Source: Saccostrea echinata
Lineage: Eukaryota
Assembly (NCBI RefSeq): GCF_033153115.1
Contig: NW_026889833.1
Span: forward strand, 1,178,001-1,242,000
DNA length: 64,000 nucleotides
Direction: 5' to 3'
Part shown: positions 13,781-64,000 of the stretch, piece by piece
Numbering within the stretch: position 1 is the first letter of the stretch
Layout: each line of letters opens with the position of its first letter
The notes under the pieces: model-generated
Seen by the model: the letters and a program-made list of their open reading frames with translations, nothing else
Told to the model about the DNA's origin: nothing
Databases searched by the model: none
Position numbers and translations under genes: made by a program

Positions 13781-13895
13781 AGTTCCTCAGAACTTAAACA
13801 TCACTCCTCAGAATTGAGGACCACACTCTCAGCCAATCACTCCTCAGATTTGAGGACCACAGCCTCAGCCAAGCCTTGCTCCTCCACTCTGAGGA
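13781..13895. repeat. ~36-bp tandem duplication spanning the stop codon of the giant gene
   Basis: tcactcctcaga(a/t)ttgaggaccaca..ctcagccaa occurs twice, with degenerate copies on either side. Confidence 0.8.
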
Positions 13896-14202
13896 CGTAA
13901 AAGCTTGTTTAGAACCTTCGGAGAGGGAACTGTCTTCTGCATATAAGGACTTTTTAACAACTGGACATAATGAGAAGGTGCCTGGGTGACATTGGAGGCA
14001 GAAAATGGACGTTGGTTGACAGAAATCTTTTTGTGTCGTTTTGGACTGCGAGGACGCTTCTTCATGAAGATTCTGTCAATGGGAGGGTCAGCATTTGTGG
14101 GGGAATCTGCCCTTTTGGGAGAGTGAGGACGACGTTCCTCTATGTATCGTGGTGCTGACAGAGCTGAAGTAGAACTCTCTCTTACCAACTGCAAAACTGG
14201 CT
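13865..14202 (-). CDS. Giant gene: terminal coding exon (basic, Ser/Pro/Arg-rich tail)
   Basis: Acceptor ttttccag at 14203, in frame with the previous exon; ends RPQSGGARLG*. A candidate polyA signal lies at ~12885 (tttatt on +). Confidence 0.85.
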
Positions 14203-17200
14203 CTGGAAAAAAGAAACATTGAAATATGGCTTTAAAATCATTTCAAGAACCTCTAAAAGGAATCAGAATCTTTAATTTACTTAACAATAGGATAAAAATA
14301 AGAACAATTGTAAATCTGAGCTACAGTTAAAATTTTTGGGATACCTTTCTTTTGCAAGATAGTTATTTGGTATTCATAACGTACAGTAAATAATGAATAT
14401 GGCTCCTTATATTATTTGATACAAAAAAAAAAAGGAAAAAAAAAGTTTAAAATGTGGTTCTCAATTATGAAGTTCAAATGATGCTTCTTTGAAAATCTGC
14501 ATTGATTTGATTCAAAGCGTAAGTTGAAGCAACCAGTAACAATTTAGAACATATTATCAAACTTTCCAAATTTTAATTAAATTGTCACGTCTTGAGATCC
14601 TTTTTACTTCGGGAAACACAGACTTGCCTGTCTGAGATTTTCATAAACAAGATTTATTTGATACAAGTGCATGAAAATATGTCAATCTGGTAGACAGGCA
14701 AGCTTGTGCTTTATGTTTTCTGAAACAGTATGTGCAAAAAATAAAATGAGAAAGTTCTGAATTTGACAAATTTCTAGACCATCCTGTCACCTCTGTATAT
14801 GACATCACTTGAAATCAATATCATTTTGAAACAGTTTTTGATTATGAACTATTGCAAAATTGTGAGAAACCCCCAAAACAAGGAGCCAAAAAGGGGGTCT
14901 TACCTAGAGACTCATCATCAATTGTCATATCATTTTTACAAGAGTCACACTGGAATACAGGACAACCCACTCCTTGAACCTCACTGAACGTGTGCCTCAT
15001 AAAGGCAGCAAAAGATGCGTAGTCATAGGCACTGTAACGACCATGCCAAGCAATGTAACCTAAAAATCAAGTCAAGAAATTATTTTTTACCACTTAAAAT
15101 TCTGGTCAATTTGAAAGCTTTTCTTCAATTGTCATTTTATCCAGTAGTTTTTTTTTTTTTTTTTTTTGATGAGCCACAAGAATGTATTTGATATAGACAG
15201 TATGTCATTGGTTGGTACAGGTCCAAAAAATCAGTACTAATTTTACATATACTAATAGTGAATTTATAAATAATCCCTTACCATCTGCATGAATAAACAG
15301 GAAAGTAGGCACACCAGCTATTCCCAGAATTTCTGTCAAATCTACGTGCTTTTTGCCATTCTCTATATCATTCCTGGGAGCAGATCCTTGTTGAAGAAAA
15401 AAAGAAACAATTGAAATCATGAAGAAAATTTCAAATTTCAAGTTTAAATTAAAAATCAATGATACAACTAGTAAAAGAAAAAGTTTATTGCATGGGTTAA
15501 AAGATAAATCTACCCAAAATTCCTTACCTGCAGTACTGTTTTTCCAGACACTGCTAGCTTCATCAATGGGGGATGCACACTGGCTTGTACAATGCCAAAT
15601 TACACCTTGTTCCCTCCAGCCATTGGATGTAATGGAGTGGATCAAGGATTTTCTGTCTGAGGCGTGGTTAGCTTCCACTCCACAGGAAACAGCGATAAAG
15701 TTATACTGAAAGTACACAAGAGTAGCCTCTGAGTACGCTTTCTGTTATTAGTGCAAATCTAACCACATGAGAGAAAAAAAATGATTAATTTTGTAAAACA
15801 CTGGGTTTATAACCATCTTTTTTTTTGTGTTGACCTTTTCTAAATAACAGTTCGTAGTTGCTTTATTACCTCAGAAGCTCCTTCTCTGGCAAAACGTGCA
15901 TAATGTGACATGACTTTCTGAGATCCATGACACCTGATAAAAGAAATTTAATCAAATTAAAATAATAAAGGAAATATTTTACCTACAATCTCGATATAAA
16001 ATTTTGATTCACCAATGAATCTTAAGTTTATAACTTAGCACTAAAGAGGCAAGAAGTCATTTTAGTTCATTTCACGAAATGATTGTCCAAAATCTTTCAA
16101 ACAATTAAGAAGTTTTCCACAATTACAGAAAATAATGCCAACCCATTTTTTCAGTTTTACAACTAACCATGGTGTCCAGAAGAGTATGGCAGTTGGGAAC
16201 TGTTTGTTGTGAGTCCCTAGGAAGGGTTTGTAGTCTCCCTGGAATATGTCTAGCAGGCTGCAGGCTGGGGGAGGGACTTTGCGTTTTAAGAGGCCCTGAT
16301 TGGCTAGTTTTTTGGCTAACTGTCGCTCATACATCACAGAGTCCTGATACTTGCAGCACCCCTGATTTGGCCACCTGGAAAAAGAAATTTTGAAGTATAT
16401 TATTACAAAACTTCCATCTTAATTTCTAAACAGCTCTAAGAGTTCAGCATTTCCTAAATTTTCGAAAGTTTTTGCGAGAAATGAAAATTAAAACATTATT
16501 CTACAGGATACATGAATATGTAAATCTTGGATTTTATCTAATAAACAGGAAAGTTGTCCAATTTTAGTAAATTTCTAAGTTCTCATATATCTGTACATAA
16601 ATTTACCTTGCATTTTGATTATGAATACTGTGATAGCAGTAGAATGAGAAGGGTCTGAAGGTCTCTGACAGAAGATCAACAGCGTTTGATTCGGCACTGG
16701 AGGCCTGCGGTTTGTCTGACACAGACACCATAGTCAATTTGTAGATTGGCTGCTCTGTTCCAAGCTAAAACATTCAAACAAATTAAATACTGTTGACACT
16801 GTAATGGTTTTGATTGAAAGTTTATAAAATTTCTTTGCATGTACATCTAAAAAATCAAGATTGCAAAGCATTCTTTTGGCTCAAATCTTTCAGAAAATCG
16901 ATATATTTCAATGTTTACTGACAGTAAAACCTATGCACTTTATTTACTTCAAACCTCATTTGAGAATTTAAATGATTTTTCTTATATATACAGAACCATT
17001 TCAAAGTGTTATTATTTTTAAGTCAGTACTCTTCATTAATTGTCATCAGCATAAATTAAAAATTGTTACATGTAATACAAGCAAGTACATTTACCTTGAT
17101 GCGAACTTGTTTGACTCCCTCATGCATGGTATTTCCATACTGTTTCCCATCAATCAGAACTTTAAATCCTGACACACTTGTCTCACTCTGCCTCTGAGGA

Positions 17201-20200
17201 CAAGACCAACTGACATGGGCAATCAGCTGCCCTGTATAATGTTCCAGGGCACTGAAGCAGTGTTCCAGAATTTCCTCTATCCTGGATAATGTGTGGGCTC
17301 CCTCAATCACTCCCCTATTCTTCTCTGCTCTCAATGGATTTGATAAAGCACCAATTTCTTTTAGTTTATGACCAACTTTTCTTATTAATCTGAAATTTAT
17401 AGAAATTTCTGTAACCTCTATTATCTAGTCCCCTTTCACTATGGCACATTGTATCCTGTTATACTTAGTTGATAAGACTGAAATCAAAAGTAGTTACCTA
17501 TCCCTCTTGTTGACTAGATCACATGTAAGTCTCTCCAGAGCCCTGCGTTCATCCAATCCAACAACTGTAACAGTAACCAGGGGTGGATCCGGGGCAGGTG
17601 CAGGGGCCACATGTAGAGGCTCAGAGCACACCACATCACCAGTGTTGTACAGCTTAAATTGAAAATTATACCCTTATTGTAACCCAATAAAATTCAATAT
17701 AAATCTTCCAGAATTAAAGACATTTCTTTATAAAACACAGAACTTGAGAATTCAGTAGATTAATTACATGTTAGAATATAATTATTCAACATATTAAACA
17801 TCAGCATGTAGTACATACATGTACTTCTAAGAAGATGCTGTATGATCCTCTCTTAAGGTTCTTGAACTCTGCCTCTCTGGTGTTAGGATGAATTGGTCCA
17901 ATGGAGGGTGTCACTTCCTTTTCTGTGTCACGTTCCACACAAACAGCCTAAGACATTAACAGTGGAAACACAAAATTATTCCCAAATGTCAGCTTAACAT
18001 AAAACAAATCAAGATCTATCAAGAAATCCATTTATCAGGGGTATTCACCTTCATTTTTCAAGGAAAACTATTCTAACAAATTGAAATTTCTCTTTGATAA
18101 AATATGAAAGTGAAAATACTGACCCTGAAATGTTTGACCTTGACCCCTTCTGTGAGGTAAGGATCATCCCAAGCAATTCTGACACAAGAACTGCTGTGGG
18201 TGGCAAGTCGTTTCAGTGCTGGGGCCTTACATCCTGGCCAAACCACCACTAGGGGTTCCGAAACTTTGCTGTGGAGTTTTTCGAAAGAAGTCAGGGCTTG
18301 CACTTGGAAAGCATATTCCTGGCACCATTTCCCATGTGTGAAGGTAAAGCTCATCTGCTCTGCATTCAATATGGCCTCAACAATGCCATTTACGTACACC
18401 TTGTAGCCTGTTACTAAGGCGTCTCCATATGTGTTGGGTTTCTCCCACTGTACTGCTATGTACCGGAAGTTGCAAGCTCTACAAGATGAAAATTAATGTT
18501 AGTAAAGTAGAACATGTAAATCAAATCAAGTGTCATATTTCAGCACAATTTGTAAATTCAACATGGCCCAAGGACAACAACAGACTTTTACTGTTTTTTC
18601 TGTTTAAAAAATTTGATCCTTTCTATATCCCACCTATAATCCCCAAAACCATGATTTGATATATTCTATACTGTAGATTCCTAAATATACGCGAGGAATA
18701 AATTATCGCGTCATTACGCGAGAAGCACCACTCGCGAAATAAAATTACTCGCTTTTATTTTTATGGTGCTTTAATGTATGTAAAATCTCTTGATAAATCA
18801 CCGATTCGCGAATTATTGTTCTCGCGGTTTGACGCCCTTGGGTCACTTCGCGATATTAAGTACTCGCGTAAAATAAGGAATTTAAAGTATCTTTGTTCAT
18901 GGAGATGCTTGCATATCAGTTGCCTATATAACCATCTTATTACTGTTCTTGAAAAGAGGATATTTAAATTTTTTTCGTAAACATTCTAGGTATAACACTT
19001 TGACCCAATCCTAGCACTTGTCCGTGAATTGAATAAAAATCTAATCTACATCATATATTAAAGGAAGCTTTCACAACAATTTTGTTTTAGCTTAGTAGTT
19101 TTTGAGAGGGTTTTATAATATTCCCATTCTATTTTAAATTCACTGCTGGTGTTTTGAATGGGAAAAAGAACATACGGTTTGATGGACTGAATCCCTTTTA
19201 CCCAAGGATGCTTTATGACAAGTTTGGTTAAAATTGGCCTGTGGGTCTCAAAATTGTGAAAAGACAGATATTTTACAGGTAACTTCAACCAGAAAACCTC
19301 ACTTGAGCCTTTGTCTTAGGTAAACTTAAAAACACTAAAAAAGACCACCATTGCATATTAAGGAAATCACATTGCATGTGATTCTTAATTAATTGACTTG
19401 TACCTGACAGACAGAATTGGAGCATCTGGTGGAGCTGAAGTCTGAATGGTCAATTGTTTGGACTTCTCCAGAATCTGTCCGTCAGCATCAATAGCAATTA
19501 GTCGGACAAAGTGAGTGGTCCCAGGCAGACAGTTGTTAATTACACAGCTACTGTCCTTATCTGAGAGTTTGACCTCTCTTTGCTGGAAAGAAAATCATAG
19601 TGACCTTTCATTCATCACAACTGTTAAAGGTAACACCAACCAAACTGAAAAACTGACTAATGACTTAAGTTTATACATCAGTCTATAAATCAGTAAACTA
19701 AATAACCAAAAGCCAATGAATTTTTGACAAATATACTACACATATTATGATTTTTACTACATGAAGGAATATTTCAAAACAATACTGTACATTCATAAAT
19801 TTTAAGTGTGATCTTTTTATACAAACATATGCCATATGTGTCCTATTTAGTGTATTCAGTTTTCTTAAGAACTTTAAAGTTTTCTACCCTTTTAAGGAAG
19901 ATTAAAGCCTTTTTAGCAGTAATAGCTCTAAAACTGATAAGTCACAATGTTTCCTTTACATTTTAATAACTGTCACATATTTTTCACCTTGTATGGTATA
20001 CTAAATTTGCTTTGATTTTCATAATTTCATTTCTCTCTCATCTTTTGTTAGAGAATTATCAATATTACAGCAAAGTTTCATTTCCCCTTAATTCTTCTCT
20101 AAGAGTTACATACTGCTGGTTGGGCCACACTGCTCCACTGAATTTTATATCCTGTTACCCCCTCTGTCTCTATGAAGTTGGACCAGTCCAATTGTATGGA

Positions 20201-23200
20201 GGTTTCTGTGATGGTAGTGACCTTGACTGGAATCATGTCCTGATCCTCCCGGATCATATCCTCCCCTGACAGAAGGCGGGGGGAGTGGGGGGAGGTGCTG
20301 ACCAGTAGCATGTTAGAGAAGGATGAGTCGCTGTAGAATGAGTTGTCACTTAAGGCCACCAGCTGTACTTTGTAGTTCCTGCAAGTCAAAAGTAATGAAA
20401 TGTATATATGTACTTACCAGAAATGTTTTGTCTACCTTTTTCACATTTCAAGGCATGATAATCATACAAGAGTACTAAGACATTTTTCTATTTTAGAGAC
20501 TTTCTTTAGCAACGTGTGAGATCCTCGATATTTATACTTGTTAATCCCTCCCCACTTCCACCTTCAAAAAAAAAACCCTACATCTCCAGCATATCAGATA
20601 ATTTTTTTAAAGAAAAACCTTAAAATAATAGATGTGAAAGTGCATAGTCCTAAAGCCAGTATTAATTTTTTCACAAGAAGTTGTTAATTAAGTTTTACTG
20701 AAACACTTACTTATTTGGACGGCATGGTATTACGGCCTTGCGATGAGAATTACTAAGTTCATTTCCCACTTTCTTGTCATTCAAATATACCTTCAAATGA
20801 AAGAATAGAAAAAAAAGACAGGTTACAAATTTCGTTCAATCTTGTACGAAAGAAATCCGATCAAATCTCTATCCCAAATAAAACACAGAAAATACGTCCA
20901 TGATAAGAAAGTTTATCTTCAATAATAAATTAAAATCTTGACAGTGTATCACTTAACAATGAAAGAGGTGATAAACAAAAGTTCTCCAAATCAATATCTG
21001 TCAAAAGATCTGGATAAAGAGAATTATTATTGACATGGTTGCTATGGAGATATTAAGGAAGCCATCTTAAAATGAAGTGCCACTGTGGAACCATGTTGCT
21101 ACAAGGATTCTTAATGTCAAAACACTTGAGCTTATGGGGAAAAAAAAATCAAATACACCTTATCAGAGAGAAAGAAAATAGAGAGCACTAGACAATCAGA
21201 TAGGGGACTGTTCAGATAACATTGATCTGTTACCTAAGCCTTATGAGTGTTTACCAGTAACCTGTCAAACACTGGAGTTGAACATTAAACATGCATGTAC
21301 AAAATGCTTAGAGAAAATCAAACAACTTTCTTCTATGACAACTGGGCATATTTCATTGTTTCAGAAGGGTCAAAATTTGGGTCAGTTATGTTTCTTCTAT
21401 TAAATGATTGATTAACATGTATGTTGTTGATTAACACACTATAAAGAATTTCATTGTAAATATGAATTTAAAATATTCAACCCATTTTTAGAATTTTCAA
21501 ATTGAGCATGCACAAATCAACAAATTTATTATGACAAAAGAGAAATAAGAATTTAACAGAGATTATTTTTAGAAAAATTTTAGCACACATTGTACATTGT
21601 AAAAGTGTTCAATGATAAATTTGACAGGTGCTTCTAAAATAAGAGTGGTATACCTGTCAAAGTCTTATCTGAGGTTTCACAAATCTTGTTTAACAATATC
21701 TTGCTTTACAAATTACCTATTAAGGCTATTACATTATGGCAATGTACTATCATCAAGCCCTTATCATTCAACCACCGTAATTCACTACCTATTGATTTCT
21801 TAATCCTAGCTAATACATTTGATTCAATACTTGTCTTCATGGCCTTGAACCTTCCTAGACACTGACCTGGTAACCTCGAACTTTGACCCCTCCAAACAGC
21901 CTAGGTTCTCCCCATTCTATGACAAACTCCTCTGGGCTAACAGACTTCAGAAAGATTTCTGGTGGATCTGGGGGACCAGGAATAACCAGCTGAATTTTCT
22001 GGTTAACCTGGTGCAGGGCATCTGTAAAGTAATCTGGTTCCACTTGGATATCATAAGAGGCCCTATAAAGATATTTCAGGTTAGAATCATATTTATGTCC
22101 AGGATAAAAAAAAAGTACAAATATGTACATAACAACTCAATTTTATTAATAGTATATAAGGAATATTAGTAAAGGAGTAAAACTTGTATTATGTAAATTT
22201 AAATTTCAATGAAAGTATGCATTTTTGATTTTTCTTTTTTAAATAAAACGTAGCAGTCTGCATCCAGAATCTTGTGAGTATCTGAATATAAGTGACACAC
22301 ATAATTGAACTCAGATATGCCTTGCTACTTACTTTAACCTTGTGACCGGTATCAGAGTTTTCCTGGCATCAGGAGTGACAACTCTTGTCTGGACCTGCCT
22401 CTCCTCAGTGTTAGACCAGATAACGTTAAACTGCTTGACGTGAGTGATGACATCACTTCTCTCCCCTTGTGTTTCCCAGCGAAGTTCAATGTCACCAAAT
22501 GTACTGTTGTCTCTATCCTCATCATGCTTGAATGTGCACTCTAAACTCTTGATGTAACCTGGAAGGACAATTGTATATCTTTTGAATGACTGAGGGTATT
22601 TTATTTGTGGTTTCTGAGTGTTACACATCAAGAAGGCTTCTATATCAAGGTTACCAATCCATATTGATCTGATCTTTCAATGATATAACAAGGCATAATT
22701 ATCAACCAGAGAGAGAGAGAGAAAGAGAGAGAGATTTAACTTCTTCTAGCTAGTAATCAGTATGGTATCAAACTTCTACTGAGAGTGAATGTTTATGTCA
22801 ATTCAACTTACCATCTTGGTCCCTGGGAAGGACAACTTCCAGAGGTTCTGAAGGTGAAGGGTCAAGGTTATCCTCATCTTGGAGTAGAGCTGAGTAGTCT
22901 ACCGTCTGTAGACTGACATTTCTGTATACTCCCTTGTACTAAAGAAGAAATCAATCAATATTGATCTTAAAACAATTTTTTTTTTTGCCCTTTTTTTGCT
23001 GCATAAATTTCTGTCAAAGAGACATTTAAGTAATTCATCATTTCCTAGTTTAACACAAGACAGAAAATCAATACACTGCCACACACAGAGCACCCATTCT
23101 ATTATTTACATGAACAATTTAATGTACCAGGTAATATTCAACCACTTTTTAATATCTTTCATTTTCATTTACCCTGATACATGTAGTTTACTCAATACAA

Positions 23201-53200: not shown

Positions 53201-56200
53201 CGTGATAATTTGCATAAACGCCGAAGGCGTTTATGCATAAAATTATCACGCAAGCCAATCGACTGATCATCGTCATGAAACCCCAAAATCTGACAGTTAT
53301 TCCTTATATGTACATGCTCTTAATTCTGCAAATTCACATGCTACAAGCCCCCGCTTCTGTCTCTATTCGTCCCGCCCCGCTCGTGATTTTTTTTCAACAC
53401 GCCTATCAATGAACCAGTAGATTTATGTAGAAATAAAGTTTTTTTTACTATTTGAAATTTTATCTCACACAAAGACATTGGAAATGTAAACATTTTATAT
53501 TTCAGTGAATTAAAACATGTGTCAAAGAAAAAAATATTTGTGATTAAAACAAATTACAATTCATGTGGAATTTGCAAGATCTATTGTAAAGCTTACATTT
53601 TCGACATTTTTCTTTTGTTTGTTGAAGGACTTGCTGTAGAAATGCATCACTCCTGTTTTGTCTATAGCCTTGCTCAAACAAGACCTAAAAATAAATCAAT
53701 CATAAAATTAAAACAGTAAAAACTTAATGAGCAATGCTTTGACAGTTCTCTACATGGCACTAAGTGATATGTGAAGCCATTACAAAGTTAGACAGTGGTA
53801 AGACCATGAGCAGATTTACAGCTAGACAAACTGACAGCCTTAGAGAAAGACATACAGACAGACAGACATACAAAGCAGACAGATGTACAGCTAGACAGAC
53901 AGACAATAAAAACTGACCTTGCACTGACTTCTTCACACTGTAGATCTTCTGTAACTTGGTCAGGATGGGTGATTTCGACTACATTCTCTTTTTGTGGTTT
54001 GCTAAAGATCCAGCACACAATGTCGTGAACTTTGACAGAGATGGGGTCAGGACGTATGATGGGTCCTACTTCCACCTCGTGAACCACTGGCTGTGTGGTC
54101 ACAACCACTGCTCCAAATATCTTTGGTAAACTTTGACTAGAAAGTAAAATTTTCTTATGTTACAAGTTTGCATATTTCATATGTTGTAACTTACTCAGAT
54201 GGTAAAATTCAAAATTGATTTAAAAAAACAAAACAAAAAAAACTAGTAAATCTTGAAAAATCAATTACCTACAACCTAGCACACAAATCAACCTAATTTT
54301 ACCTTTTATAGTAAAATACTCCTGGAAATTCGAAGGTGTGTACGAAAGCTGAGGGTGAGTCCCGAGGCATACCGCTGCAGAATCCCCCAGGGATGGGATC
54401 ACCTTGATGGGACACCTGTATGACATTATGCTGCTTCTTGGTGCTCTGCCACACCCACCAGACCCGGTCATTGGGTCGGACCGACATGATGACCTTCTGT
54501 TCTGGACCGCTGTCTGTCAGGTGGATTGTGTGATTCTGAGAAAAACAGAAACAAGAAAAAAATTCTCATGTTTAAATATGAAAAAAGATTTTCAAGGACT
54601 TATATCCGAACAAGCAAAATTTTTTTGCTTGTAATATTTCTGTAAGTTCCCTTTTGCCAGATAATATTATATTTTGAATTTTCTTTTTCAAACAAATGAA
54701 AGCTATTTTAAAACCCAAATAATGCAAACTGCAATTTATACATTGTCCATATACAAGGGAAATAACTACAACATCACTGACCTTTTCTCCTGGGCTGACT
54801 ATCACAGAACACACAGTCGAGTTCCGTACCCTGTAATGGTACACTCCAGTTGTGGAATAAAAAACTGTTGCAAATCCCACATCTGTGATCAGTTTTACAG
54901 TCTCCTCATCTGGGTGCTGGTATTTAGCTGCAGATAAAAAAACAAAGTTCTCTTTATTTCTAATAATTGCAATTCCACAATCTTTAAATTTTTTCCTTTC
55001 TCCATAAGATTTATTATTCACTAAAGTTAGTTTTACAACAAAACTTATTTGTAGTTCTGAACTGTAAATTTATCCTCCACAATGAATGCAAATATAGCAA
55101 TACATTGATCTACATGTACATTATGCTTTAGAGATTGCAGTTTTGAAACTTTGCAGTTTATGGAATTTTAAGACTGTGTTTAAGACCACCTTCCTGACTT
55201 ACATTCATCCTCTGGTGTGGAAGGTCGCTTCGTTGCTGGGTTCAGACATTTTTCTACCTCCCTCAGTAAAACTGGAATATTTTTCTTTGAAAACAGAATG
55301 GGGTTCCACCAGAACCAGATTCTCTCTCCTGTTCTGATTCGTACTACATCTGTTCAGATTAAAAGGCAAAAAATAAAAAATGATTAGTATGATACTGAAA
55401 TTTATTACACCAATCATAACTTTTCATTTGTATTGTCCTGTGCTATGAGGTTACCTGGTTCAAAACCGTCCTCCTTGATCATTACCCTGTGTTCCTTTGG
55501 TTTAGGTTTGACTATCACAGTACCAATGTACTCAGCTGCCTCCTGGAAGTTTTGGTCCGAGTAATAGAACACTCCAGGTTCTGTGAACACATGAGACAGC
55601 AGACCCTGCTTACTGTAAAACAGATTATGTCAATCACTTAATACATGCCTCCTGTTTGTGAGCAAAAATCAAACCACTTCATTTATCAACTTATTGATAA
55701 GTCTTTTCTCTTGTGACATATTGTGGACCCCCCTTTCAAATATTTTTTTTTCGTTGTCACCTTCAATAGTTAGTAAATTTTATATGGCACAAATTTAACA
55801 AAGCTATATCACATAAACTGTAACTTAACATAAAATAGGCTAAGTGAATCAGTTGCAATAGGTCTAATTATTTAGGAAGTGGCAATATTTAACAGTAAAC
55901 TATATAGAAGTCCAGATAGCACCCAGTTTACCATCATATAACATAACAATTCAATGAAAACCAGTGGTTATGTTTAAATAAATAAACTAACAGGAGAATT
56001 GATTATCTCCCCTACCTTGGTTGACTCCACCTGAAGCCATTCTGAACCGGTTGATATGGTTCCTCATCATCCTGGTTCAAGGTCGGGGCCTCTATCTGAT
56101 ATACACAATGGTGTTTCTTGCACTGTGAACACACAAAAAAAATGTCAGGGTTATTACCTAAAATTGTATAATCTAGAATAATGATGGCCTCTTTTTTAAA

Positions 56201-59200
56201 AGCAATTATTTTTTTAAAAATCTGACCTCTGTCTATTCATGTCCTCTTAAATTAATACAAAATAAAACAAAAGCTACCGGTACTGCTTTTATTTATTTAT
56301 CTAAAACTTCTTTTTTTATAATTTTTAATAAATTTGCTCAGAGTTTTAAAAACTTTGAGAGTTCAAATCTCTACCTTGAATTTGTCCCAGTACCACCAGA
56401 CTCTGTCCCCTGTCTCTATCAGTAACACAGGGGGGTGGTAGGCACGGTCTGATATCTCCACTTTGTACTCCCTACGGTCATCAAATGTATTTACAGTAAA
56501 GCAATTCAACATCGTCAAGTCTTAAGCAAAAGTTAGGGAACTTAATGTTAATATTTCCCGTACTTTTTAATAGGCAAACCTTTAAAACTAGACTATATTT
56601 AAGAAGAGCACTTTTCAATATCATCCTGTACTTCCAAGAAATGGCATGGCACGTACTGCCATACATTTAGGTAACTAGGCACACAAAAGGAATATTAAAT
56701 TGAAATTGTTATTAACTATCATGAAGATCCACTTAGGAAACATTCCTTAATGTTAATTCTTTCTCAATAGATAACTCTCTTTAATACCTGATGCTTTGCC
56801 GGACTCTCACAACACAGAAATGTTGTTTATGAAGCTCGGAACTCTCTGTCTGAAAAAAGTATATTCCTGGACGCCTGATAAAAAGAAAAATGTTTTCTTG
56901 TAAATTTTTTTGATGCATAATTTCTCCTATTCAAAATGCACCATGTACAATTATTACCTCTACTAAAAAGTTAATAATAAAGTCGTTATATATATATATA
57001 CAATGTAAATCAGACTTACGGAAATTTTTTTGAGAAGTGTCCTGTGATTGTTCTTACAACATTACTGAAAAAAAATAATCATGATTAAAAGATTTACATG
57101 TCTTAAATCATAAATACATGTAGTTGATTAAACTAGAAGGAAATTTCTGTGTACAGTGATACCTTTAATAAGTTTAATATATAGAGAATATTACATACTA
57201 AGATCCATATCATGTGTCATATCAGCCCGAGTGGCCCCATATCAGCCCGAGGGCTGATATGGGGCCTGAGGGCTGATATGACATATGATATGGATTTCAG
57301 TGTGTAGTATTCTATTTATCATATATTTAAAATACTTAATATGCGAGTTAACATAAAGTCATTGAAGAATGTTTCCTGCATGTCTATGACCCTTTTCTTT
57401 AAAATCTAATAGCGCCAATAATACATCTTTCAAAACAAATTAGTCCACAAATGTTCATAAAGAATTATTTTACATGTATATTGAAATAAAATCAAGTTAA
57501 TTAACTTTTAAATTTTATACAAACGTTACTTCCAGTTTGATATGGATTTTTGCACGCTGGTCCGACACGCGATTAGGGTTGGATACCGTTAAGAATGAAA
57601 CAGTACGATACCATACCAGTATTTTTGAAACGATGAGGTATTTTTAACGATATGGTACTATACCTTGATGAATGAGAATAAGGGTTCATTTCATAACAAA
57701 TATGCTTTCACCAATCATCAACCTTTCAATGTTATAACCTAAAATGAGCTTATAAACTATGTTTATATTTCAACCTTTTAATAAATGACCAACAAAACAA
57801 ATAAATTAAATCTCAAACAAATTAACTTGAATAGATACATAATCACAAGTATACACAACTTCCATGGTTGCTAGGACCCATTTTGTTTGGTCACACTAAA
57901 CAACGAGACATTAGAAGATGGATAGAAATGCACATCATATTATTGCGACATTTTGCCTTTTTAATTTACATTTATTATCAGTTTTTATTAATTAAGTTAA
58001 ACACGATTAATCTTAATAAAAGAGATATACATACTGATTTACCTCGAATATTGGCAGTCGAAAGCAAGTGTCGTATAGTCATACTAAGCATCCATTTCGT
58101 TAATTAGCCTACCCTTTCAATGTGCAGAGAATTCTATTTTAGCGAGTTTTAAATCATTTTGAATGTATTAAAATGTTTCTAAGATTAAGAAATAGTACCG
58201 TTATTAGTACCGATATTAAATGAAATGGTATTTTACCGGTATTTTTGAAGTAACTATTCGGTATGGTTTTGGTACCGAGTACCGGTATCCAACCCTACAC
58301 GTGATATGGATTTTTGGACCGGTCCTTGACATGGGGTATTGTGACGTCACCCATATTGCAAAGTGCAGAATCGGTGTATTTACTACTTAGTATATGATAA
58401 AGGTCTTTAACAATTATATCAGAATTTCAAAAGAAACTGGTCTTTGAGAATGAAATTTTCATCATAAATAACTACAATAAAACTGGAAACAATGGAAATA
58501 TAATGAATTCATGCTTACAGCAAAGTGATTTATATTCCCTGTAGGTTTTAAACATACCAGTACTATATATGCATTTAACAGATATACAACAAATTACATT
58601 TATTATGAATCAAGTTGTTTAATACCTGACACTTTGCCAAAACCATGTTTTACTGTAAGTATATTCTTTACAGATTTTCTTCATACATAAAACACATACC
58701 TTGCCCCATCTGCCCACTGACTTTTGACAAACACTCCTTTGTCAAACAGATAATTCACTTCCTGTACGGAGTGGGGCACAGTACAGTCCTTCCATGACCA
58801 CTCAACCGTGTCCCCCTGGTCAACAGCAATGATCTGGGGGTTAAAACCATCGTCTGTCACTCCTGCCCTCAACGGCAGACGTCGTCTTACAATCACAGTC
58901 AGAGGTGTACAACGTATCTTAGACCTAAAAGAGAAAGAAACTTTGAAAACTAAGCTGAAAACATTAACTTGTAGAGTACACAGAATGGATCCCACTGAAA
59001 ACATGAATATTAAGTTGTACACAGAATGGAACCCTCAATTCTCAAAATGCTAGTTTATAACTAGATCACAGTGCGACTTTTATCTTCAGCTTACACTGCA
59101 AATTTATATTCTCCTTCTAAGTTGAATTGTTGTATATAGTTATCATCTTTGTCCTTGACCTTGGCATCTTTGGAACCAAATCCACCAATCACAGGTCTTA

Positions 59201-60055
59201 GGTTGTCACCATCATGGATCACCTAGGTAACCAAATCAGTCACAGACTTTATGAATACATGTAACAGTAAAGTATCTCATGGCAAATTTTAGAGGGTCTT
59301 GTAAAAAAAAAAAAAGAATAACGAAATAATTTAAATTTGTGGAAATAATTATAACCTGAACAATCTCCAGGGTCTTTCTGCCTCCCTTTTCAAACAAAAC
59401 TCCTTGACCTTCCATAATGATGACCTCTGGCACTGCAAACCCTGTATCCATGACATCCACCCTAGCACATTGAACTCCCTCTATTGTTGAAATAAAAATC
59501 AAAACATGTCTTTCATTTTACTAATAGGTAAAAAAGCAGCATTTCTCCATTTTACTTTTTACATTTTGCTATAAAAATTCATTCAAATCAGTTGATGCTT
59601 AATAAAGTGTAATCCCGTTCTTGATATTTTTCATTGTTCTAGAAGAAAATCTGGCAGATTCACAAGATTATACATTTCCACCTCTACAATAATTTGAGGA
59701 TTGCAAAAACTTTTCTGGAAATAAAATGATGCTGTCAAACACAAAAACTTCATTAACTAACCAACATATTTCATTTTACTGGTATCCACTTCCTCCCCAT
59801 CTATCTGTGCCAGATTCCGGGAGCCCCTCTGACTGAGGTCTGTTGGCTTACTAGCCTGTTCCTCCATGGTTGATTGGGAAGGACCCTCCTCTACTTGCTC
59901 AAGGGGGTCAGTCCCTGTGTCCACTCTTGCTGGTCCCTCCTGTTCCTGGTCTGGGGGGTTGGTCCCTGCTTCAACTTTTGTAGAACCCTCCTCCTCTTGT
60001 CTTATGGGACTAGTCCCAGTCTCAACTTTTGTTGGAGGGGTCTCTTCTGGTTCCT
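13865..60055 (-). CDS. Giant uncharacterised multidomain protein (7 cupredoxin-like repeats, Fn3-associated domain, ~16 fibronectin type III repeats, C-terminal thioredoxin-like domain); 5'-incomplete
   Basis: 57 core exons with GT-AG boundaries and matching intron phases give one open frame of ~10.1 kb ending at TGA 13865-13867. The first exon found (59762-60055) begins in phase 1, so further exons lie upstream. Confidence 0.9.
14904..16374 (-). CDS. Giant gene: TlpA/ResA-like thioredoxin-fold domain with CxxS
   Basis: Exons 16168-16374, 15870-15933, 15528-15705, 15282-15386 and 14904-15059 give TAILFWTPWCHGSQK...FIAVS...LGIAGVPTFLFIHADGYIAW. Confidence 0.8.
16607..36391 (-). CDS. Giant gene: main array of ~14 FN3 repeats
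   Basis: Exons 36195-36391, 35966-36088, 35664-35814, 35252-35390, 34701-34914, 34277-34397, 33718-33915, 33191-33386, 31098-31238, 25237-25332, 25046-25135, 24690-24863, 23319-24247, 22812-22938, 22333-22558, 21867-22062, 20711-20790, 20114-20378, 19404-19582, 18124-18478, 17819-17947, 17498-17652, 17095-17389, 16607-16764. Repeated PxPP..vxWxxP..GYx(I/V)Y(V/L)(N/D)..LxPGxxY motifs. Confidence 0.9.
18580..19331 (+). mobile_element. Non-autonomous Helentron/HINE-like repeat interrupted by a MITE
   Basis: Internal units 'cccaaggatgcttt..caagtttggttaaaattggcc' and an end 'ctcacttgagcc...aggt..actaaaa'-like motif resemble the abundant oyster Helentron-type repeats; recognised by eye. Confidence 0.5.
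18669..18889. mobile_element. MITE with TA-bounded inverted ends, CpG-rich
   Basis: tactgtagattcct...tacgcgag at the left end matches ctcgcgta...aggaatttaaagta at the right end as imperfect inverted repeats; internal cgcga repeats. Confidence 0.75.
32225..32645. repeat. Degenerate minisatellite (~60-75 bp unit)
   Basis: Repeated ctagcttcaatct...tagctttaagcatacaatgagtt...agttaggatctagttagttaccct. Confidence 0.85.
36527..42234 (-). CDS. Giant gene: low-complexity linker exons (42154-42234, 40522-40575, 38434-40326, 37934-37945, 36527-37107)
   Basis: All begin in phase 1, and the first four are frame-symmetric (81, 54, 1893 and 12 nt). The 638-aa and 208-aa ORFs in the track are these exons. 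Confidence 0.75.
43136..48030 (-). CDS. Giant gene: first two FN3 repeats
   Basis: Exons 47902-48030, 47446-47598, 46621-46785, 44592-44688 and 43136-43300 give EVFWEEP..KGYQIFLNG..ITGLAGNRIYEV and VVVWMS..IKGYLVFLND. Confidence 0.85.
48155..49396 (-). CDS. Giant gene: chitobiase/beta-hexosaminidase C-terminal (Fn3-associated) domain exons
   Basis: Exons 49239-49396, 48838-48944 and 48155-48254. The first two encode IELVCETLGSKIFYTTDGSPP...LYNPEKGVIL...IRAMAVKEGLLNS, the typical 'IYYTxDGSxP...I(R/K)A(M/I)A' signature. Confidence 0.82.
48644..48797. mobile_element. Degenerate Tc1/mariner-pogo-type MITE
   Basis: TA-CAGT...ACTG-TA ends; similar to the copy at 61279. Confidence 0.55.
50476..59480 (-). 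CDS. Giant gene: exons encoding seven cupredoxin/plastocyanin-like repeats
   Basis: Exons 59356-59480, 59095-59222, 58700-58924, 57020-57064, 56788-56874, 56375-56471, 56016-56122, 55455-55612, 55203-55349, 54782-54927, 54303-54535, 53918-54136, 53597-53684, 52824-52934, 51847-51924, then 50687-50843 or 50476-50635. The repeated pattern is GFxPxxxxVxxGDxVxWxW...H(N/S)V...HTFxxPGxYxY. Confidence 0.85.
52087..52754. mobile_element. Tc1/mariner-pogo-type MITE(s), apparently composite
   Basis: The left end tacagtaaaact pairs with gttttactgta at 52675 and with a second right end ttttactgta at 52754; internal ggatatagc(a/g)aa repeats. Confidence 0.75.
53146..53306. mobile_element. Palindromic (fold-back) element
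   Basis: Near-perfect ~75-bp arms taaggaataactgtc...gcataaacgcc-gaa-ggcgtttatgc...gacagttattcctta. Confidence 0.85.
53815..53910. repeat. (CAGA)n-like simple repeat
   Basis: Degenerate acagacagac / gctagaca units next to the donor of exon 53918-54136. Confidence 0.7.
57179..58400. mobile_element. Composite non-autonomous element with 5' hairpin (57179-57319)
   Basis: Hairpin built from atatcagccc/gggctgatat units; ttatcatata (57316) and tatatgataa (~58390-58400) form an inverted pair; internal tgatatggattt repeats. Confidence 0.65.
57574..58297. mobile_element. hAT-type MITE with 8-bp target-site duplication
   Basis: Perfect 15-bp TIR TAGGGTTGGATACCG...CGGTATCCAACCCTA flanked by cacgcgat / cacgtgat; sub-terminal tacc/ggta repeats. 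Confidence 0.9.
59762..60055 (-). CDS. Giant gene: acidic exon with three ~17-aa repeats
   Basis: Phase 1-1 exon containing TKVETGTSP..EEG / TKVEAGTNP..QEG / ARVDTGTDP..EEG. Confidence 0.75.
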
Positions 60056-63254: not shown

Positions 63255-64000
63255 CATGTATGTAAGCTTATAACATTACAGAACATATGAACAATTTACA
63301 TTTCTATATAGCATATTACAATGAACATTTAAATACCTTGCACAGTTTCCATATTTTGTATACTTATATCCCAGATTTCTAAAAACCTGTTAAATTCCAA
63401 CAAATATTAATGACAAAAATCCTTAATGAAACGTTTTCAATGTTTATGAGTTTAACTTATAATCGTTCACCTTTATTGATACACAAGCACGCTGCTGCCA
63501 TTAGAAACACTATCAAATTGTCGCCTGAGATAGGAAAATGGAAATTTTAAATCGGAACTTTCAATCCTTCCACCTATACCCATGTTACCGAGAAATCTTT
63601 GCACTGCAGATCTACTCATTTGAAAGTGTGTTTGATATAGCGACAGGTTTTGGATTGATGTATCAATAGCCTGATATCTAGTCAAACAAGCAGGGAGATT
63701 ATTAACAGAAAATCCTGTCCTTGTTTAGGTTTAAATTATATTACCCAGGTAAGTTTCAGTGCAGGTATATTCTAAACAATGGCTACCTGTGTGCTTGTGC
63801 ATAATATAATGCTTCTGGTCTGATCTTTACCTGGTGATTTCTCCAAGAATGAGAATTGAGCAATTTGAGCAGAGATGCAAACTGTAATGTTGCATTTCGA
63901 TCAAGACAACAACATTAAACATAGGATTTTGTCACTTCCAAGCTTCAATACAAGCTTGACATACACAAATTTGGTACTCCATGAAAACAGCTACTCAACA

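What the first reader, a model, noticed from the sequence alone, without database searches (positions are those of the whole stretch)
13865..60055. Uncharacterised >3,300-aa protein joining a cupredoxin array, an FN3 rod and a CxxS thioredoxin domain
Seen: the exons splice into one frame with 7 cupredoxin-like repeats, a Fn3-associated domain, ~16 FN3 repeats, a TlpA-like thioredoxin fold and a basic tail, with no transmembrane segment in the assembled part. Known: cupredoxin folds and TlpA-like thioredoxins usually occur in small electron-transfer or periplasmic proteins, and I recognise no named animal protein with this architecture. Inference: a long scaffold, perhaps cytoplasmic or ciliary, carrying metal-binding-fold and redox-fold modules at opposite ends.
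Basis: partly seen in the sequence, partly recalled or inferred. Interest (0 to 1): 0.85.

Follow-up and report, generated by a model that had tools for sequence, protein, structure and literature searches.

The report
Giant cupredoxin–FN3–thioredoxin scaffold gene
This is one real, expressed oyster gene for a roughly 3,400-residue protein with no signal peptide or membrane segment, built from seven copper-less cupredoxin folds, 16 FN3 domains and a one-cysteine thioredoxin fold; it is conserved from sea anemones to sea urchins and molluscs, yet no member has ever been studied.

Summary

**Gene model.** The minus strand carries one gene, with its coding sequence running from 63352 to 13865.
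- 57 exons give 3,365 aa.
- A symmetrical 1.9-kb cassette exon raises this to 3,996 aa.
- RNA contigs from four runs prove the last 11 introns. They join the FN3 rod, the thioredoxin exons and the basic tail on one mRNA.
- The remaining exons were placed with several orthologue proteins as guides. They agree except at three junctions (6-17 nt) and form one open frame.

**Domains.**
- There are seven cupredoxin-like repeats. The fold is supported by AlphaFold2 and Foldseek on relatives. No copper ligand set is present.
- These are followed by a CHB_HEX_C/Fn3_assoc domain, 16 FN3 domains and a disordered Ser/Arg-rich linker.
- The C-terminus holds a TlpA-like thioredoxin fold with the motif WCHGS, then a basic tail.
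- There is no signal peptide and no transmembrane segment.

**Relatives.** One-to-one orthologues, nearly all labelled "uncharacterized" or "hypothetical", occur in cnidarians, echinoderms, hemichordates, molluscs, annelids, nemerteans and brachiopods. None was found in chordates, arthropods or nematodes. Most start with MGxGAS, an N-myristoylation consensus; the oyster form found here starts with an acidic METVQEE.

**Reading.** The likeliest reading is a cytoplasmic or cortical rod-like scaffold with a monothiol redox or metal module. The function is inferred, not shown.

The scan noted the same architecture before on another piece of this genome (s1-813483). An identical copy lies on contig C11.

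The parts
63337..63352 (-). Coding part of exon 1. The ATG is at 63352-63350. It encodes METVQ plus one base, and the donor is CAAG|gtattt.
   Evidence: A pattern search found this site, and its phase fits the acceptor at 60055. The joined N-terminus METVQEEPEETPP matches the Saccostrea cucullata RefSeq N-terminus.
59762..60055 (-). Exon 2: an acidic, repeat-like N-terminal segment. The first 104 aa hold 26 Asp/Glu and 9 Lys/Arg.
   Evidence: tblastn with the oyster N-termini gave 78% identity to Saccostrea.
50685..59480 (-). Array of seven cupredoxin-like repeats of about 95-105 aa each, spread over 16 exons. Repeat spans: R1 59460-58879, R2 58863-56793, R3 56461-55498, R4 55485-54785, R5 54526-54088, R6 54063-53600, R7 52874-50685.
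   Evidence: A locally built repeat HMM finds 7 hits here and in 21 of 25 orthologue models (7 of 7 full-length models except the partial Bulinus one). Pfam Cupredoxin_1 and Copper-bind are above cut-off in orthologues. An AlphaFold2 model of the repeat-5 homologue P0002 has pLDDT 78. Its best Foldseek PDB hits are cupredoxins: 5fc9 with TM 0.70/0.77, then plastocyanins and amicyanins. The ESM Atlas points the same way.
50476..50635 (-). Duplicate of exon 50687-50843 (160 nt against 157 nt), a candidate mutually exclusive exon in repeat 7.
   Evidence: Both copies align to the same orthologue residues. Swapping one for the other keeps the open frame, while using both shifts it. Which is used was not tested with RNA.
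48838..49396 (-). CHB_HEX_C_1 / Fn3_assoc domain, in two exons.
   Evidence: Pfam on the open frame 49191-49529: CHB_HEX_C_1 E 9.7e-6, 25.9 bits against a cut-off of 22; Fn3_assoc 22.8 bits against 23. The same domain is present in all full-length orthologues scanned.
44599..47985 (-). FN3 domains 1 and 2.
   Evidence: Local FN3 HMM; exons from the guided spliced alignment.
40522..40575 (-). Possible 54-nt frame-neutral micro-exon. This is a prediction only.
   Evidence: The exon-chain program proposed it. The open frame is kept with or without it. It has no homology or RNA support.
38434..40326 (-). 1,893-nt symmetrical cassette exon encoding 631 aa of disordered Ser/Arg/Pro-rich linker with a basic cluster.
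   Evidence: The length is divisible by 3 and the open frame is kept with or without it. It is absent from the oyster RefSeq isoforms read. A homologous stretch is present in Mytilus coruscus and Sinanodonta models. Pfam finds nothing.
36527..37107 (-). Constitutive 581-nt linker exon, disordered and carrying a Ser-Glu-Thr repeat. It is needed to keep the reading frame.
   Evidence: Phase arithmetic. It is 81-97% identical to the same segment in all oyster isoforms read.
17819..36352 (-). FN3 domains 3 to 15, the main rod, in 21 exons.
   Evidence: Pfam fn3 on open frames 23253-24281 (E 1.3e-20), 18076-18492 and 20102-20413. Local FN3 HMM. Exons agree between four guides apart from three junctions that vary by 6-17 nt. 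The last three exons are proven by RNA joints.
16720..17652 (-). Conserved segment between FN3 15 and 16 (helical by sequence pattern only, not tested), followed by FN3 domain 16.
   Evidence: Exons are RNA-proven. FN3 HMM hit at 17250-16720. Conserved columns appear in alignment A1.
16607..16764 (-). Exon carrying the conserved Cys/His motif (FYC-x-H-x2-H ... G-C-C) just upstream of the thioredoxin fold.
   Evidence: RNA-proven exon. The Cys, the second His and the second Cys of G-C-C are each kept in at least 23 of the 25 orthologue models with a usable C-terminus. They are lost together with the active-site Cys in Intoshia and Dimorphilus.
14904..16374 (-). TlpA-like thioredoxin-fold domain in five exons: 16168-16374, 15870-15933, 15528-15705, 15282-15386 and 14904-15059. 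The active site is W-C-H-G-S, with the intron lying inside the Trp codon. The cis-Pro loop GVPT is at about 15315, and a C-x4-C-x2-C motif at about 14964.
   Evidence: All four introns are proven by RNA joints; translation. WCxxS and GVPT are conserved. An AlphaFold2 model of the homologue L019:434-1021 has a core pLDDT of 70-90. The Foldseek PDB hits listed are almost all TlpA/ResA/DsbE/CcmG/Etrx-type thioredoxin-fold proteins, with probability 1.0 and E down to 7e-6. Lingula Thioredoxin_8 scores E 7.5e-4, below the cut-off. The ESM Atlas agrees.
13865..14202 (-). Last exon: the basic tail and the stop codon at 13867-13865. From the C-x4-C-x2-C motif to the end there are 132 aa with 23 Lys/Arg and 12 Asp/Glu. 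It includes the conserved short motif ISVNQRPFSA.
   Evidence: RNA contigs join 14202 to 14904 and run on beyond 13800 as 3'UTR. Composition; motif conservation.

Best explanation
**What it is (shown).** This is the oyster orthologue of an old, single-copy animal gene family that databases hold only as 'uncharacterized protein'. Examples are Ostrea edulis LOC125654190, Crassostrea gigas LOC105321045, Strongylocentrotus LOC577931 and Nematostella LOC116611762. One mRNA encodes about 3,365 aa, or 3,996 aa with a cassette exon. In order, the protein has:
- an acidic N-terminus;
- seven cupredoxin-fold domains that lack the copper ligands;
- a CHB_HEX_C/Fn3_assoc domain;
- two FN3 domains;
- a long disordered Ser/Arg-rich linker;
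- fourteen more FN3 domains;
- a Cys/His motif;
- a TlpA-like thioredoxin fold with a single active-site cysteine (WCxxS);
- a basic tail.

**How it probably works (inferred).**
- It is an intracellular, rod-like scaffold. In most species it is tethered to a membrane by N-myristoylation; in oysters and mussels there is also an acidic, untethered N-terminal isoform.
- The copper-less cupredoxin array serves as a protein-binding or structural module, not as an electron carrier.
- The C-terminal monothiol thioredoxin fold, together with the conserved flanking Cys/His, either captures a partner through a mixed disulfide or holds a metal or redox centre.
- The disordered linker is the likely regulated hinge.
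For: **One gene.**
- RNA contigs of 3.1-4.1 kb in four runs from two studies splice 12 exons from FN3 to the stop codon.
- Those exons form one 772-aa frame.
- The whole locus is collinear with single proteins of Bulinus and Ptychodera.
- The model aligns end to end with Ostrea isoform X1, residues 1-3365 against 1-3480, at 88% identity.

**Folds.**
- Cupredoxin.
- TlpA-like thioredoxin.
- FN3.
- CHB_HEX_C.

**No copper site.** The column that holds the copper-ligand cysteine is Cys in only 2 of 176 repeats, and never together with His in the ligand loop.

**Intracellular.**
- None of nine orthologue models has a 19-residue window with a Kyte-Doolittle mean of 1.8 or more. The window model's maximum is 1.52.
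- 19 of 25 species models begin MG-x-G-A-S, the N-myristoylation consensus.
- Mytilus edulis has both MGAGAS and acidic first exons.

**Monothiol site under selection.** WCxxS is kept in 23 of 25 lineages from Cnidaria to Bilateria. It is lost only where the other conserved Cys/His are also lost.
Against: - No experiment or expression pattern bears on function, and no paper mentions any member.
- The myristoylation start was not found in this window or in the 20 kb upstream. The oyster RefSeq isoforms read all start with acidic or other non-MG sequences.
- Pfam's Thioredoxin_8 model does not reach its cut-off on any orthologue and gave no match at this locus in the six-frame scan of the genome.
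- The fold evidence comes from relatives, not from the window's own spliced sequence. L019 is 25% identical to the window (E 9e-39). P0002 aligned at 64% identity to the window's repeat-5 exon.
- The thioredoxin model has a mean pLDDT of only 65.7 and lacks the last strand and helix.
- The copper-ligand columns were set by alignment, not by a structure of each repeat.
Confidence: 0.6

Rival explanations
1. It is a structural component of cilia or flagella, or of their base: the same scaffold, but specifically ciliary and delivered through its myristoylated N-terminus.
For: The family occurs in animals with abundant motile cilia (cnidarians, echinoderms, hemichordates, molluscs, annelids, nemerteans, brachiopods, orthonectids). 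It was not found in nematodes or arthropods. 19 of 25 models start with a myristoylation consensus. From general knowledge, several ciliary proteins are myristoylated cargo.
Against: It was not found in chordates either, although these have motile cilia. No expression, proteome or localisation data could be reached. The oyster isoform found here has no myristoylation start.
Confidence: 0.15
2. It is a secreted or cell-surface matrix or adhesion protein, as most FN3-rich animal proteins are. One orthologue is even labelled 'fibronectin, partial'.
For: FN3 arrays and CHB_HEX_C/Fn3_assoc domains are common in extracellular proteins. The Plakobranchus model is named fibronectin.
Against: Neither the window model nor the nine orthologue models scanned has a signal peptide or a hydrophobic segment. 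The N-terminus is either a myristoylation consensus or strongly acidic. The linker is Ser/Arg-rich with basic clusters. The conserved cysteines are few, and I saw no sign of a disulfide-rich extracellular module.
Confidence: 0.05
3. It is an active electron-transfer or copper-handling enzyme: the cupredoxin domains bind copper and pass electrons to, or receive copper through, the TlpA-like domain. Bacterial TlpA serves copper-centre assembly in this way.
For: Among the best structural matches are TlpA in complex with the Sco copper chaperone and with cytochrome oxidase subunit II. The first copper-ligand His, followed by Asn, is kept in several repeats.
Against: The essential ligand Cys is absent: it is Cys in 2 of 176 repeats, and none has Cys plus His in the ligand loop. 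The thioredoxin site is CxxS, not CxxC, so it cannot by itself complete a dithiol reduction cycle (general knowledge of thioredoxin chemistry).
Confidence: 0.04
4. It is two or more neighbouring genes wrongly joined, by the reader here and by automatic annotation elsewhere.
For: RNA was laid only on the last 6 kb. The junction across the 6-kb linker region (43136 to 36391) rests on homology and frame arithmetic. Mytilus coruscus has an 1,807-aa model that holds a stretch homologous to the cassette exon, which would fit a short N-terminal isoform.
Against: The same order of all modules is found in single gene models of more than 25 species across seven phyla. The model aligns end to end with RefSeq oyster isoforms. 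The open frame is kept through every junction. FN3 to thioredoxin to tail is proven by RNA.
Confidence: 0.03

Closest known systems
RefSeq 'uncharacterized protein' orthologues: Ostrea edulis LOC125654190, Crassostrea gigas LOC105321045, C. virginica LOC111106240, Saccostrea cucullata LOC134246841/LOC134237993, S. purpuratus LOC577931, Nematostella LOC116611762
   Same: They are the same gene. Identity is 86-88% end to end with Ostrea and Crassostrea, and 91-97.6% with the Saccostrea fragments. Module order and count are the same: 7 cupredoxin-like repeats, Fn3_assoc, about 16 FN3 domains and the thioredoxin-like end.
   Different: Nothing essential differs. They are predictions without any study. 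Their precomputed Pfam lists contain no thioredoxin family, so that domain is not annotated there.
TlpA / ResA / CcmG(DsbE) / Etrx family of bacterial thiol-disulfide oxidoreductases (Pfam Thioredoxin_8, AhpC-TSA, Redoxin clan)
   Same: The predicted fold matches over whole targets, about 137 columns, with target-normalised TM up to 0.65 and probability 1.0. The layout is W-C-x-x at the start of helix 1 and a cis-Pro loop (GVPT) before strand 3.
   Different: Those are small, secreted or membrane-anchored periplasmic enzymes with CxxC. This is a domain inside a giant protein without a signal peptide, with CxxS, with extra conserved Cys/His on both sides, and with Pfam scores below cut-off.
Eukaryotic Thioredoxin_8 proteins: nucleoredoxin-like and NHLRC2-like genes of the same genome
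   Same: They share the fold class and are cytoplasmic. Local profile comparison aligns the active-site strand/helix and the cis-Pro strand in the right places.
   Different: Those genes score 65-81 bits with PF13905 and carry WCPPC or CxxC-type sites. This locus gave no PF13905 match. hhalign gave only P 0.002-0.004, with probability 9-15%.
Single-cysteine (CxxS) thioredoxin-fold proteins such as ERp44 and AGR2 (from general knowledge, not tested here)
   Same: A thioredoxin fold keeps the N-terminal nucleophilic Cys and has Ser in place of the resolving Cys. In those proteins this supports long-lived mixed disulfides with client proteins.
   Different: Those are small proteins of the secretory pathway. 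No sequence relationship was tested or is claimed.
Type-1 copper cupredoxins: plastocyanin, amicyanin, pseudoazurin, Nitrosopumilus purple cupredoxin 5fc9
   Same: Eight-strand Greek-key sandwich. The best match has rmsd 1.6 A over 83 columns and 28% identity. The first ligand His, followed by Asn, is retained in several repeats.
   Different: There is no Cys-His-Met ligand loop, seven copies lie in tandem, and the setting is an animal protein with no signal peptide.
Giant intracellular FN3/Ig rod proteins (titin, obscurin, twitchin; RIM-BP2 FN3 domains)
   Same: A long array of FN3 domains in a protein without signal peptide or membrane segment. Weak Pfam Ig_RIMBP2 and titin PDB matches reflect FN3 similarity.
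   Different: No Ig domains, kinase, SH3 or other module of those families was found. Titin-named hits lack the cupredoxin and thioredoxin parts.

Membership tests
Cupredoxin fold (Pfam Cupredoxin_1 / Copper-bind clan) | Greek-key eight-strand beta sandwich recognisable by profile and by structure | tested here: met
   Pfam Cupredoxin_1 and Copper-bind are above cut-off on orthologues. An AlphaFold2 model of the repeat-5 homologue has pLDDT 78 and its best PDB matches are all cupredoxins. The window's own single exons give only a faint hit, E 0.26.
Type-1 (blue) copper proteins | Copper ligand set: His, then Cys-x(n)-His-x(n)-Met in the C-terminal loop | tested here: not met
   The Cys column is Ser, Asp, Val or Thr in nearly all repeats. 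It is Cys in 2 of 176 repeats, and never together with His at the loop column (alignment).
Fibronectin type III domain | Match to Pfam PF00041 above cut-off | tested here: met
   Open frame 23253-24281: 73.8 bits against 25. Open frame 18076-18492: 30 bits. A local HMM finds 16 domains in the model.
CHB_HEX_C_1 / Fn3_assoc | Match to PF13290 or PF13287 above cut-off | tested here: met
   PF13290 scores 25.9 bits against 22 on open frame 49191-49529. PF13287 scores 22.8 against 23, just below. Both are above cut-off in Ptychodera and Saccoglossus.
TlpA-like thioredoxin fold (Thioredoxin_8 and relatives) | Thioredoxin fold with N-terminal hairpin, active site at the start of helix 1, and a cis-Pro loop | tested here: met
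   The model of homologue L019:434-1021 was tested. The PDB matches listed are almost all TlpA, ResA, DsbE/CcmG, Etrx and StoA-type proteins, with probability 1.0. GVPT is invariant in alignment A1 and cis-Pro is kept in the C-terminal alignment. This was tested on a relative that is 25% identical to the window (E 9e-39), not on the window's spliced sequence.
TlpA-like thioredoxin fold (Thioredoxin_8 and relatives) | Pfam profile match above the curated cut-off | tested here: not met
   The best result is Lingula, 20.2 bits against 27. Other orthologues give nothing. The six-frame scan of the genome with PF13905 gave no match at this locus.
Dithiol thioredoxin-type oxidoreductases | CxxC active site | tested here: not met
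   The window has WCHGS, proven by RNA-joined exons. Ser (Ala in Anneissia) stands at the second position in the 23 lineages that keep the Cys.
N-myristoylated proteins | Met-Gly start with a small residue at position 6 (consensus MGxxxS/T) | tested here: not met
   The window N-terminus found is METVQEE. No MG-type first exon was found in the window or 20 kb upstream. The feature is met in 19 of 25 orthologue models. Actual lipidation cannot be tested here.
Secreted or membrane FN3 proteins | Signal peptide or transmembrane helix | tested here: not met
   The maximum 19-residue hydropathy is 1.52 in the window model. None of nine orthologue models has a window of 1.8 or more. This is a simple hydropathy scan, not a dedicated predictor.

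The most novel reading that the evidence does not exclude
The family is a previously unrecognised, ancient animal cortical or ciliary 'ruler'. A myristoyl anchor and a copper-less cupredoxin array sit at the membrane, a 16-FN3 rod sets a fixed distance, and a distal monothiol thioredoxin/Cys-His centre acts as a redox- or metal-gated latch for a partner. Chordates and ecdysozoans would have lost this system.
Probability: 0.15. Interest if true: 0.8.

Novelty: new variant of a known kind. Interest (0 to 1): 0.6.

Why it matters
Cupredoxin folds are very rare in animal proteins that lack a signal peptide, and I know of no other protein with a tandem array of seven (recalled from memory, not searched). 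Joining that array to an FN3 rod and a single-cysteine TlpA-like thioredoxin fold is an architecture with no characterised example.

The gene is large, single-copy (the genome's only other match is an identical copy on contig C11) and conserved in order and domain number from cnidarians to echinoderms and molluscs. It therefore very likely does something important in these animals. It has probably escaped attention because no orthologue turned up in vertebrates, arthropods or nematodes.

This report gives three things to build on:
- a complete gene model with RNA-proven splice sites for the redox end;
- structural support for two folds that Pfam barely detects;
- testable features: myristoylated against acidic N-terminal isoforms, the WCxxS cysteine, and the Cys/His cluster that is lost as a block.

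Nematostella, sea urchin and oyster all offer ways to test these.

Tried and rejected
- **Pfam on single exons of the cupredoxin and thioredoxin parts.** Almost nothing, because introns cut the domains.
- **The search for homologous proteins with one repeat exon.** Only three exon-sized fragments.
- **The search for homologous proteins with the Lingula C-terminal region.** Only the query itself.
- **PDB sequence search with Lingula P0005.** Only FN3 hits. With the exon 16170-16373 there were none.
- **PF13905 scan of the own genome.** It finds nucleoredoxin-like and NHLRC2-like genes but not this locus.
- **Local hhalign of the C-terminal profile against those genes.** The right segments align, but weakly: P 0.002-0.004 and probability 9-15%.
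- **Search for an MGxGAS first exon in the window and 20 kb upstream.** Not found.
- **My first two exon-chain models.** They over-extended or dropped exons. A protein-guided spliced aligner replaced them.
- **Idea that the His-Cys after helix 2 is the resolving cysteine.** Rejected. That Cys is replaced in 8 of the 23 species that keep the active-site Cys.
- **Titin, usherin and tenascin-named hits.** They are generic FN3 matches without the other modules.
- **Paper searches by domain words and by 18 gene or protein identifiers.** Nothing relevant.
- **Joined model.** It was assembled only inside local scripts, to check the frame, count domains and compare with proteins already fetched.

Full report
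**Where and what.** The window is AT-rich animal DNA with about 29-40% GC. It is G000:C84:1178001-1242000 of a 923-Mb assembly. Nearly all long open frames between 13.8 and 60.1 kb lie on the minus strand. Pfam on single open frames gave these results:
- fn3 at 23253-24281 (E 1.3e-20), 18076-18492 and 20102-20413;
- CHB_HEX_C_1/Fn3_assoc at 49191-49529;
- only a faint Cupredoxin_1 hit, and no thioredoxin hit, because those domains are cut by introns.

**Relatives.** I searched the 343-aa FN3 open frame against 1.84 billion representative proteins. It returned full-length proteins of 2,961-3,697 aa from Bulinus, Ptychodera and Anneissia, and partial ones from Lingula, Saccoglossus, Dimorphilus, Intoshia and Nematostella. 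All were labelled uncharacterized, hypothetical or predicted.
- Pfam on these shows Cupredoxin_1 and/or Copper-bind (above cut-off in several), Fn3_assoc/CHB_HEX_C_1 and many fn3.
- tblastn of the Bulinus and Ptychodera proteins against the window is collinear from 59222 down to 14935.
- A profile search with six full-length members added orthologues from many more species: 13 further molluscs including Ostrea, Crassostrea, Mytilus, Mya, Haliotis and Lottia; Owenia; Lineus; and seven more echinoderms and hemichordates. Every one lacks a functional name, apart from one Plakobranchus model labelled "fibronectin, partial".
- No chordate, arthropod or nematode orthologue appeared. Vertebrate hits are titin or tenascin FN3 matches that lack the other modules.
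- The window protein is 88% identical end to end to Ostrea edulis isoform X1, 86.5-87% to Crassostrea, and 91-97.6% to Saccostrea cucullata fragments. The window therefore comes from an oyster close to Saccostrea.

**Transcript evidence.** I laid four runs that hold the FN3 exon on window 13800-19799.
- Single contigs of 3.1-4.1 kb carry eleven joints, all with CT..AC ends, which is GT..AG on the minus strand.
- They define exons 19404-19582, 18124-18478, 17819-17947, 17498-17652, 17095-17389, 16607-16764, 16168-16374, 15870-15933, 15528-15705, 15282-15386, 14904-15059 and the last exon ending at 14202. The contigs run on past 13800 as 3'UTR.
- Joined in a local script, these exons give one 772-aa frame that ends at the stop 13867-13865.
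- The FN3 rod, the thioredoxin exons and the basic tail are therefore on one mRNA.
- The runs are Logan contigs, so they show neither abundance nor the 5' end.

**Gene model.** Two simple exon-chain models of mine were imprecise. I then wrote a protein-to-genome spliced aligner.
- With the Ptychodera protein, about 36% identical, it reproduced all eleven RNA-proven introns. Its splice-site matrices had been trained on those same introns, so this is not a fully independent check.
- With four different guides it gave the same 24 exons from 59480 to 43136, apart from the local-alignment ends and one 45-nt exon missed with one guide.
- It gave the same rod exons from 36391 to 19404, apart from three junctions that vary by 6-17 nt.
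- The N-terminal block is a stop-free 1,074-aa frame, and every exon has AG/GT borders.
- Phase arithmetic shows that the 581-nt exon 36527-37107 is needed to link the two blocks. The 1,893-nt exon 38434-40326 and a predicted 54-nt exon are frame-neutral.
- Oyster and mussel RefSeq N-termini led to the true start. ATG at 63352, then METVQ plus one base and a GT donor, joins the acceptor at 60055 and reproduces the Saccostrea N-terminus.
- The final model has 57 exons and 3,365 aa, or 58 exons and 3,996 aa with the cassette.
- The joined protein was used only inside local scripts.

**Domain count.**
- A repeat HMM built locally from the orthologues finds seven cupredoxin-like repeats in the window model and in 21 of 25 orthologue models. 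The four exceptions have 3, 6, 6 and 8 hits, and include the partial Bulinus model.
- An FN3 HMM finds 16 domains in the window and in Ptychodera: two before the linker and fourteen after.
- In the long form the linker is 825 aa, with Ser 12%, Arg 11%, Glu 8% and Pro 7.5%, and it holds a strong basic cluster.
- The highest 19-residue hydropathy is 1.52 and lies inside an FN3 strand. No transmembrane segment is present.

**Cupredoxin fold.**
- P0002 is a 105-aa fragment from a related animal that aligned at 64% identity to the window's repeat-5 exon and covers a whole repeat 5. I folded it with a 10-row alignment and obtained pLDDT 78 and eight strands.
- The best Foldseek PDB matches are all cupredoxins. 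These are the Nitrosopumilus purple cupredoxin 5fc9 (TM 0.70/0.77, rmsd 1.6 A), then plastocyanins, amicyanins and pseudoazurins, all with probability 1.0.
- The ESM Atlas gives Copper-bind and Cupredoxin_1 clusters at 0.90.
- The copper site is absent. Across 176 repeats of 26 species, the column of the ligand Cys is Ser, Asp, Val or Thr. It is Cys in two repeats only, and never together with His at the loop column.
- The first ligand His, followed by Asn, is kept in several repeats.
- One flag printed ('with HN 0') came from an off-by-one column in my script and should be ignored. The per-repeat letters printed there show the His.

**Thioredoxin fold.**
- The RNA-joined sequence reads FWTPW-CHGS. 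The intron lies inside the Trp codon, and a GVPT loop follows about 100 residues later.
- An alignment of 26 species shows W-C-x-x-S in 23 of the 25 orthologues with a usable C-terminus. The position after x-x is Ser in 22 and Ala in Anneissia.
- The upstream Cys and His, the second Cys of G-C-C and a Cys after strand 2 are kept in 22-23 of the 25, and a His further on in all 25.
- In Intoshia and Dimorphilus the active-site Cys and the four other conserved Cys/His positions are lost together, while the cis-Pro remains.
- A C-x4-C-x2-C motif follows in about half of the species, including the window.
- Sequence-only tests were weak:
  - Thioredoxin_8 scores E 7.5e-4, below cut-off, in Lingula only.
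  - The PF13905 scan of the genome gave no hit at this locus.
  - hhalign gave P 0.002-0.004, with the correct segments aligned.
  - PDB sequence searches found nothing.
  - The ESM Atlas gave 0.82-0.84, all thioredoxin-like, which is a lead only.
- A degenerate DNA pattern for I-L-F-W-T-K-W-C found one metagenome contig, L019, that encodes a homologue without introns in this region, with the motif WCMSS. It is 25% identical to the window, E 9e-39.
- Its residues 145-340, folded with six orthologues, gave a mean pLDDT of 65.7, with the core at 70-90.
- The Foldseek PDB matches listed are almost all TlpA, ResA, DsbE/CcmG, Etrx, StoA and PilB-N proteins. They have probability 1.0 and E down to 7e-6, and cover the whole targets.
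The caveat is that the structure is of a relative and lacks the last strand and helix.

**N-terminus and location.**
- 19 of 25 species models begin MG-x-G-A-S (MGVSVS in Nematostella). This fits the N-myristoylation consensus.
- Mytilus edulis has both an MGAGAS isoform and isoforms with an acidic repeat-like first coding exon. The oyster isoforms read have only acidic or other starts.
- In this window I found the acidic start and no MG exon within 24 kb upstream.
- Either way there is no signal peptide. An intracellular location is inferred, with membrane tethering in most lineages.

**Interpretation.** Several things are shown: one gene, its architecture, the folds, the loss of the copper site, the conserved monothiol site, a wide but patchy distribution among animals, and no study in the literature I could search. 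The rest is inferred:
- a rod-like cytoplasmic or cortical scaffold;
- a cupredoxin array serving as an interaction module;
- a C-terminal domain that either forms mixed disulfides through its single cysteine, as CxxS thioredoxin-fold proteins are known to do, or holds a metal or redox centre with the flanking Cys/His, because these residues are kept and lost as a block.

Rivals are a specifically ciliary role, an extracellular matrix protein, an active copper enzyme, and merged genes. They are weighed in their own sections.

**Novelty.** The gene is already predicted in RefSeq for many species, so the locus itself is not new. What is new:
- recognition of the thioredoxin-fold module, which is absent from the precomputed Pfam lists;
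- structural support for the seven copper-less cupredoxin folds;
- the conserved myristoylation start;
- the block-wise conserved Cys/His set.

No characterised family has this architecture.

**Limits.**
- Only one read-laying run of 6 kb was allowed, so the 5' two-thirds of the model rests on homology.
- Three splice junctions in the rod are ambiguous by 6-17 nt.

Noticed in passing
window 7701-8354 (-): The next gene downstream on the same strand has a 218-aa open frame. It matches Pfam RD3 (retinal degeneration 3 family) at E 2.8e-33.
   Followed up: no
window 1247-2717 (+): Three consecutive open frames lie here. The first matches reverse transcriptase RVT_1 (E 2.8e-18), so this is probably a decayed non-LTR retroelement.
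   Followed up: no
window 18600-19400: The intron between exons 19404-19582 and 18124-18478 holds repeat-like sequence. RNA contig depth there is 10-100 times that of the exons, with many variant letters and loose ends. This looks like an expressed interspersed repeat, not part of the gene.
   Followed up: no
G000:C11:5038771-5048466 (opposite orientation): Two stretches of the locus, the window's last 1 kb and the repeat-5 exon, have 100% identical copies on contig C11. This is most likely an assembly duplicate or haplotig.
   Followed up: partly
L002 about 4700-5900 (G000:C84:1246700-1247900, upstream of the window): The same short open frame (MGDQSFT) recurs about every 166 bp at least seven times, which points to a tandem repeat of about 166 bp.
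   Followed up: no
window 13865-14202 (-), last exon: A short motif in the basic tail, ISVNQRPFSA, is conserved in Lingula, Anneissia and Ptychodera although the tail around it is not. It may be a docking or phosphorylation site.
   Followed up: no
window 38434-40326 (-): Residues 165-296 of the cassette exon have homologues at the same place in the Mytilus coruscus (E 1.7e-15) and Sinanodonta models, so part of this 'disordered' exon is conserved. Reading through its donor meets a stop after about 8 codons, which would allow a short isoform that ends here.
   Followed up: partly
L019 (ENA metagenome contig ERZ1738535 NODE-2733, 4,082 bp): An unknown organism carries a homologue of the C-terminal part with almost no introns: one short gap or frame change after the GVPT strand. 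It has the motif WCMSS and a long low-complexity tail.
   Followed up: partly
ESM Atlas result for Lingula P0005 residues 1085-1400: The nearest feature clusters include diatom proteins of about 340-370 aa that combine Thioredoxin_8 with fn3. This is a smaller pairing of the same two folds outside animals.
   Followed up: no
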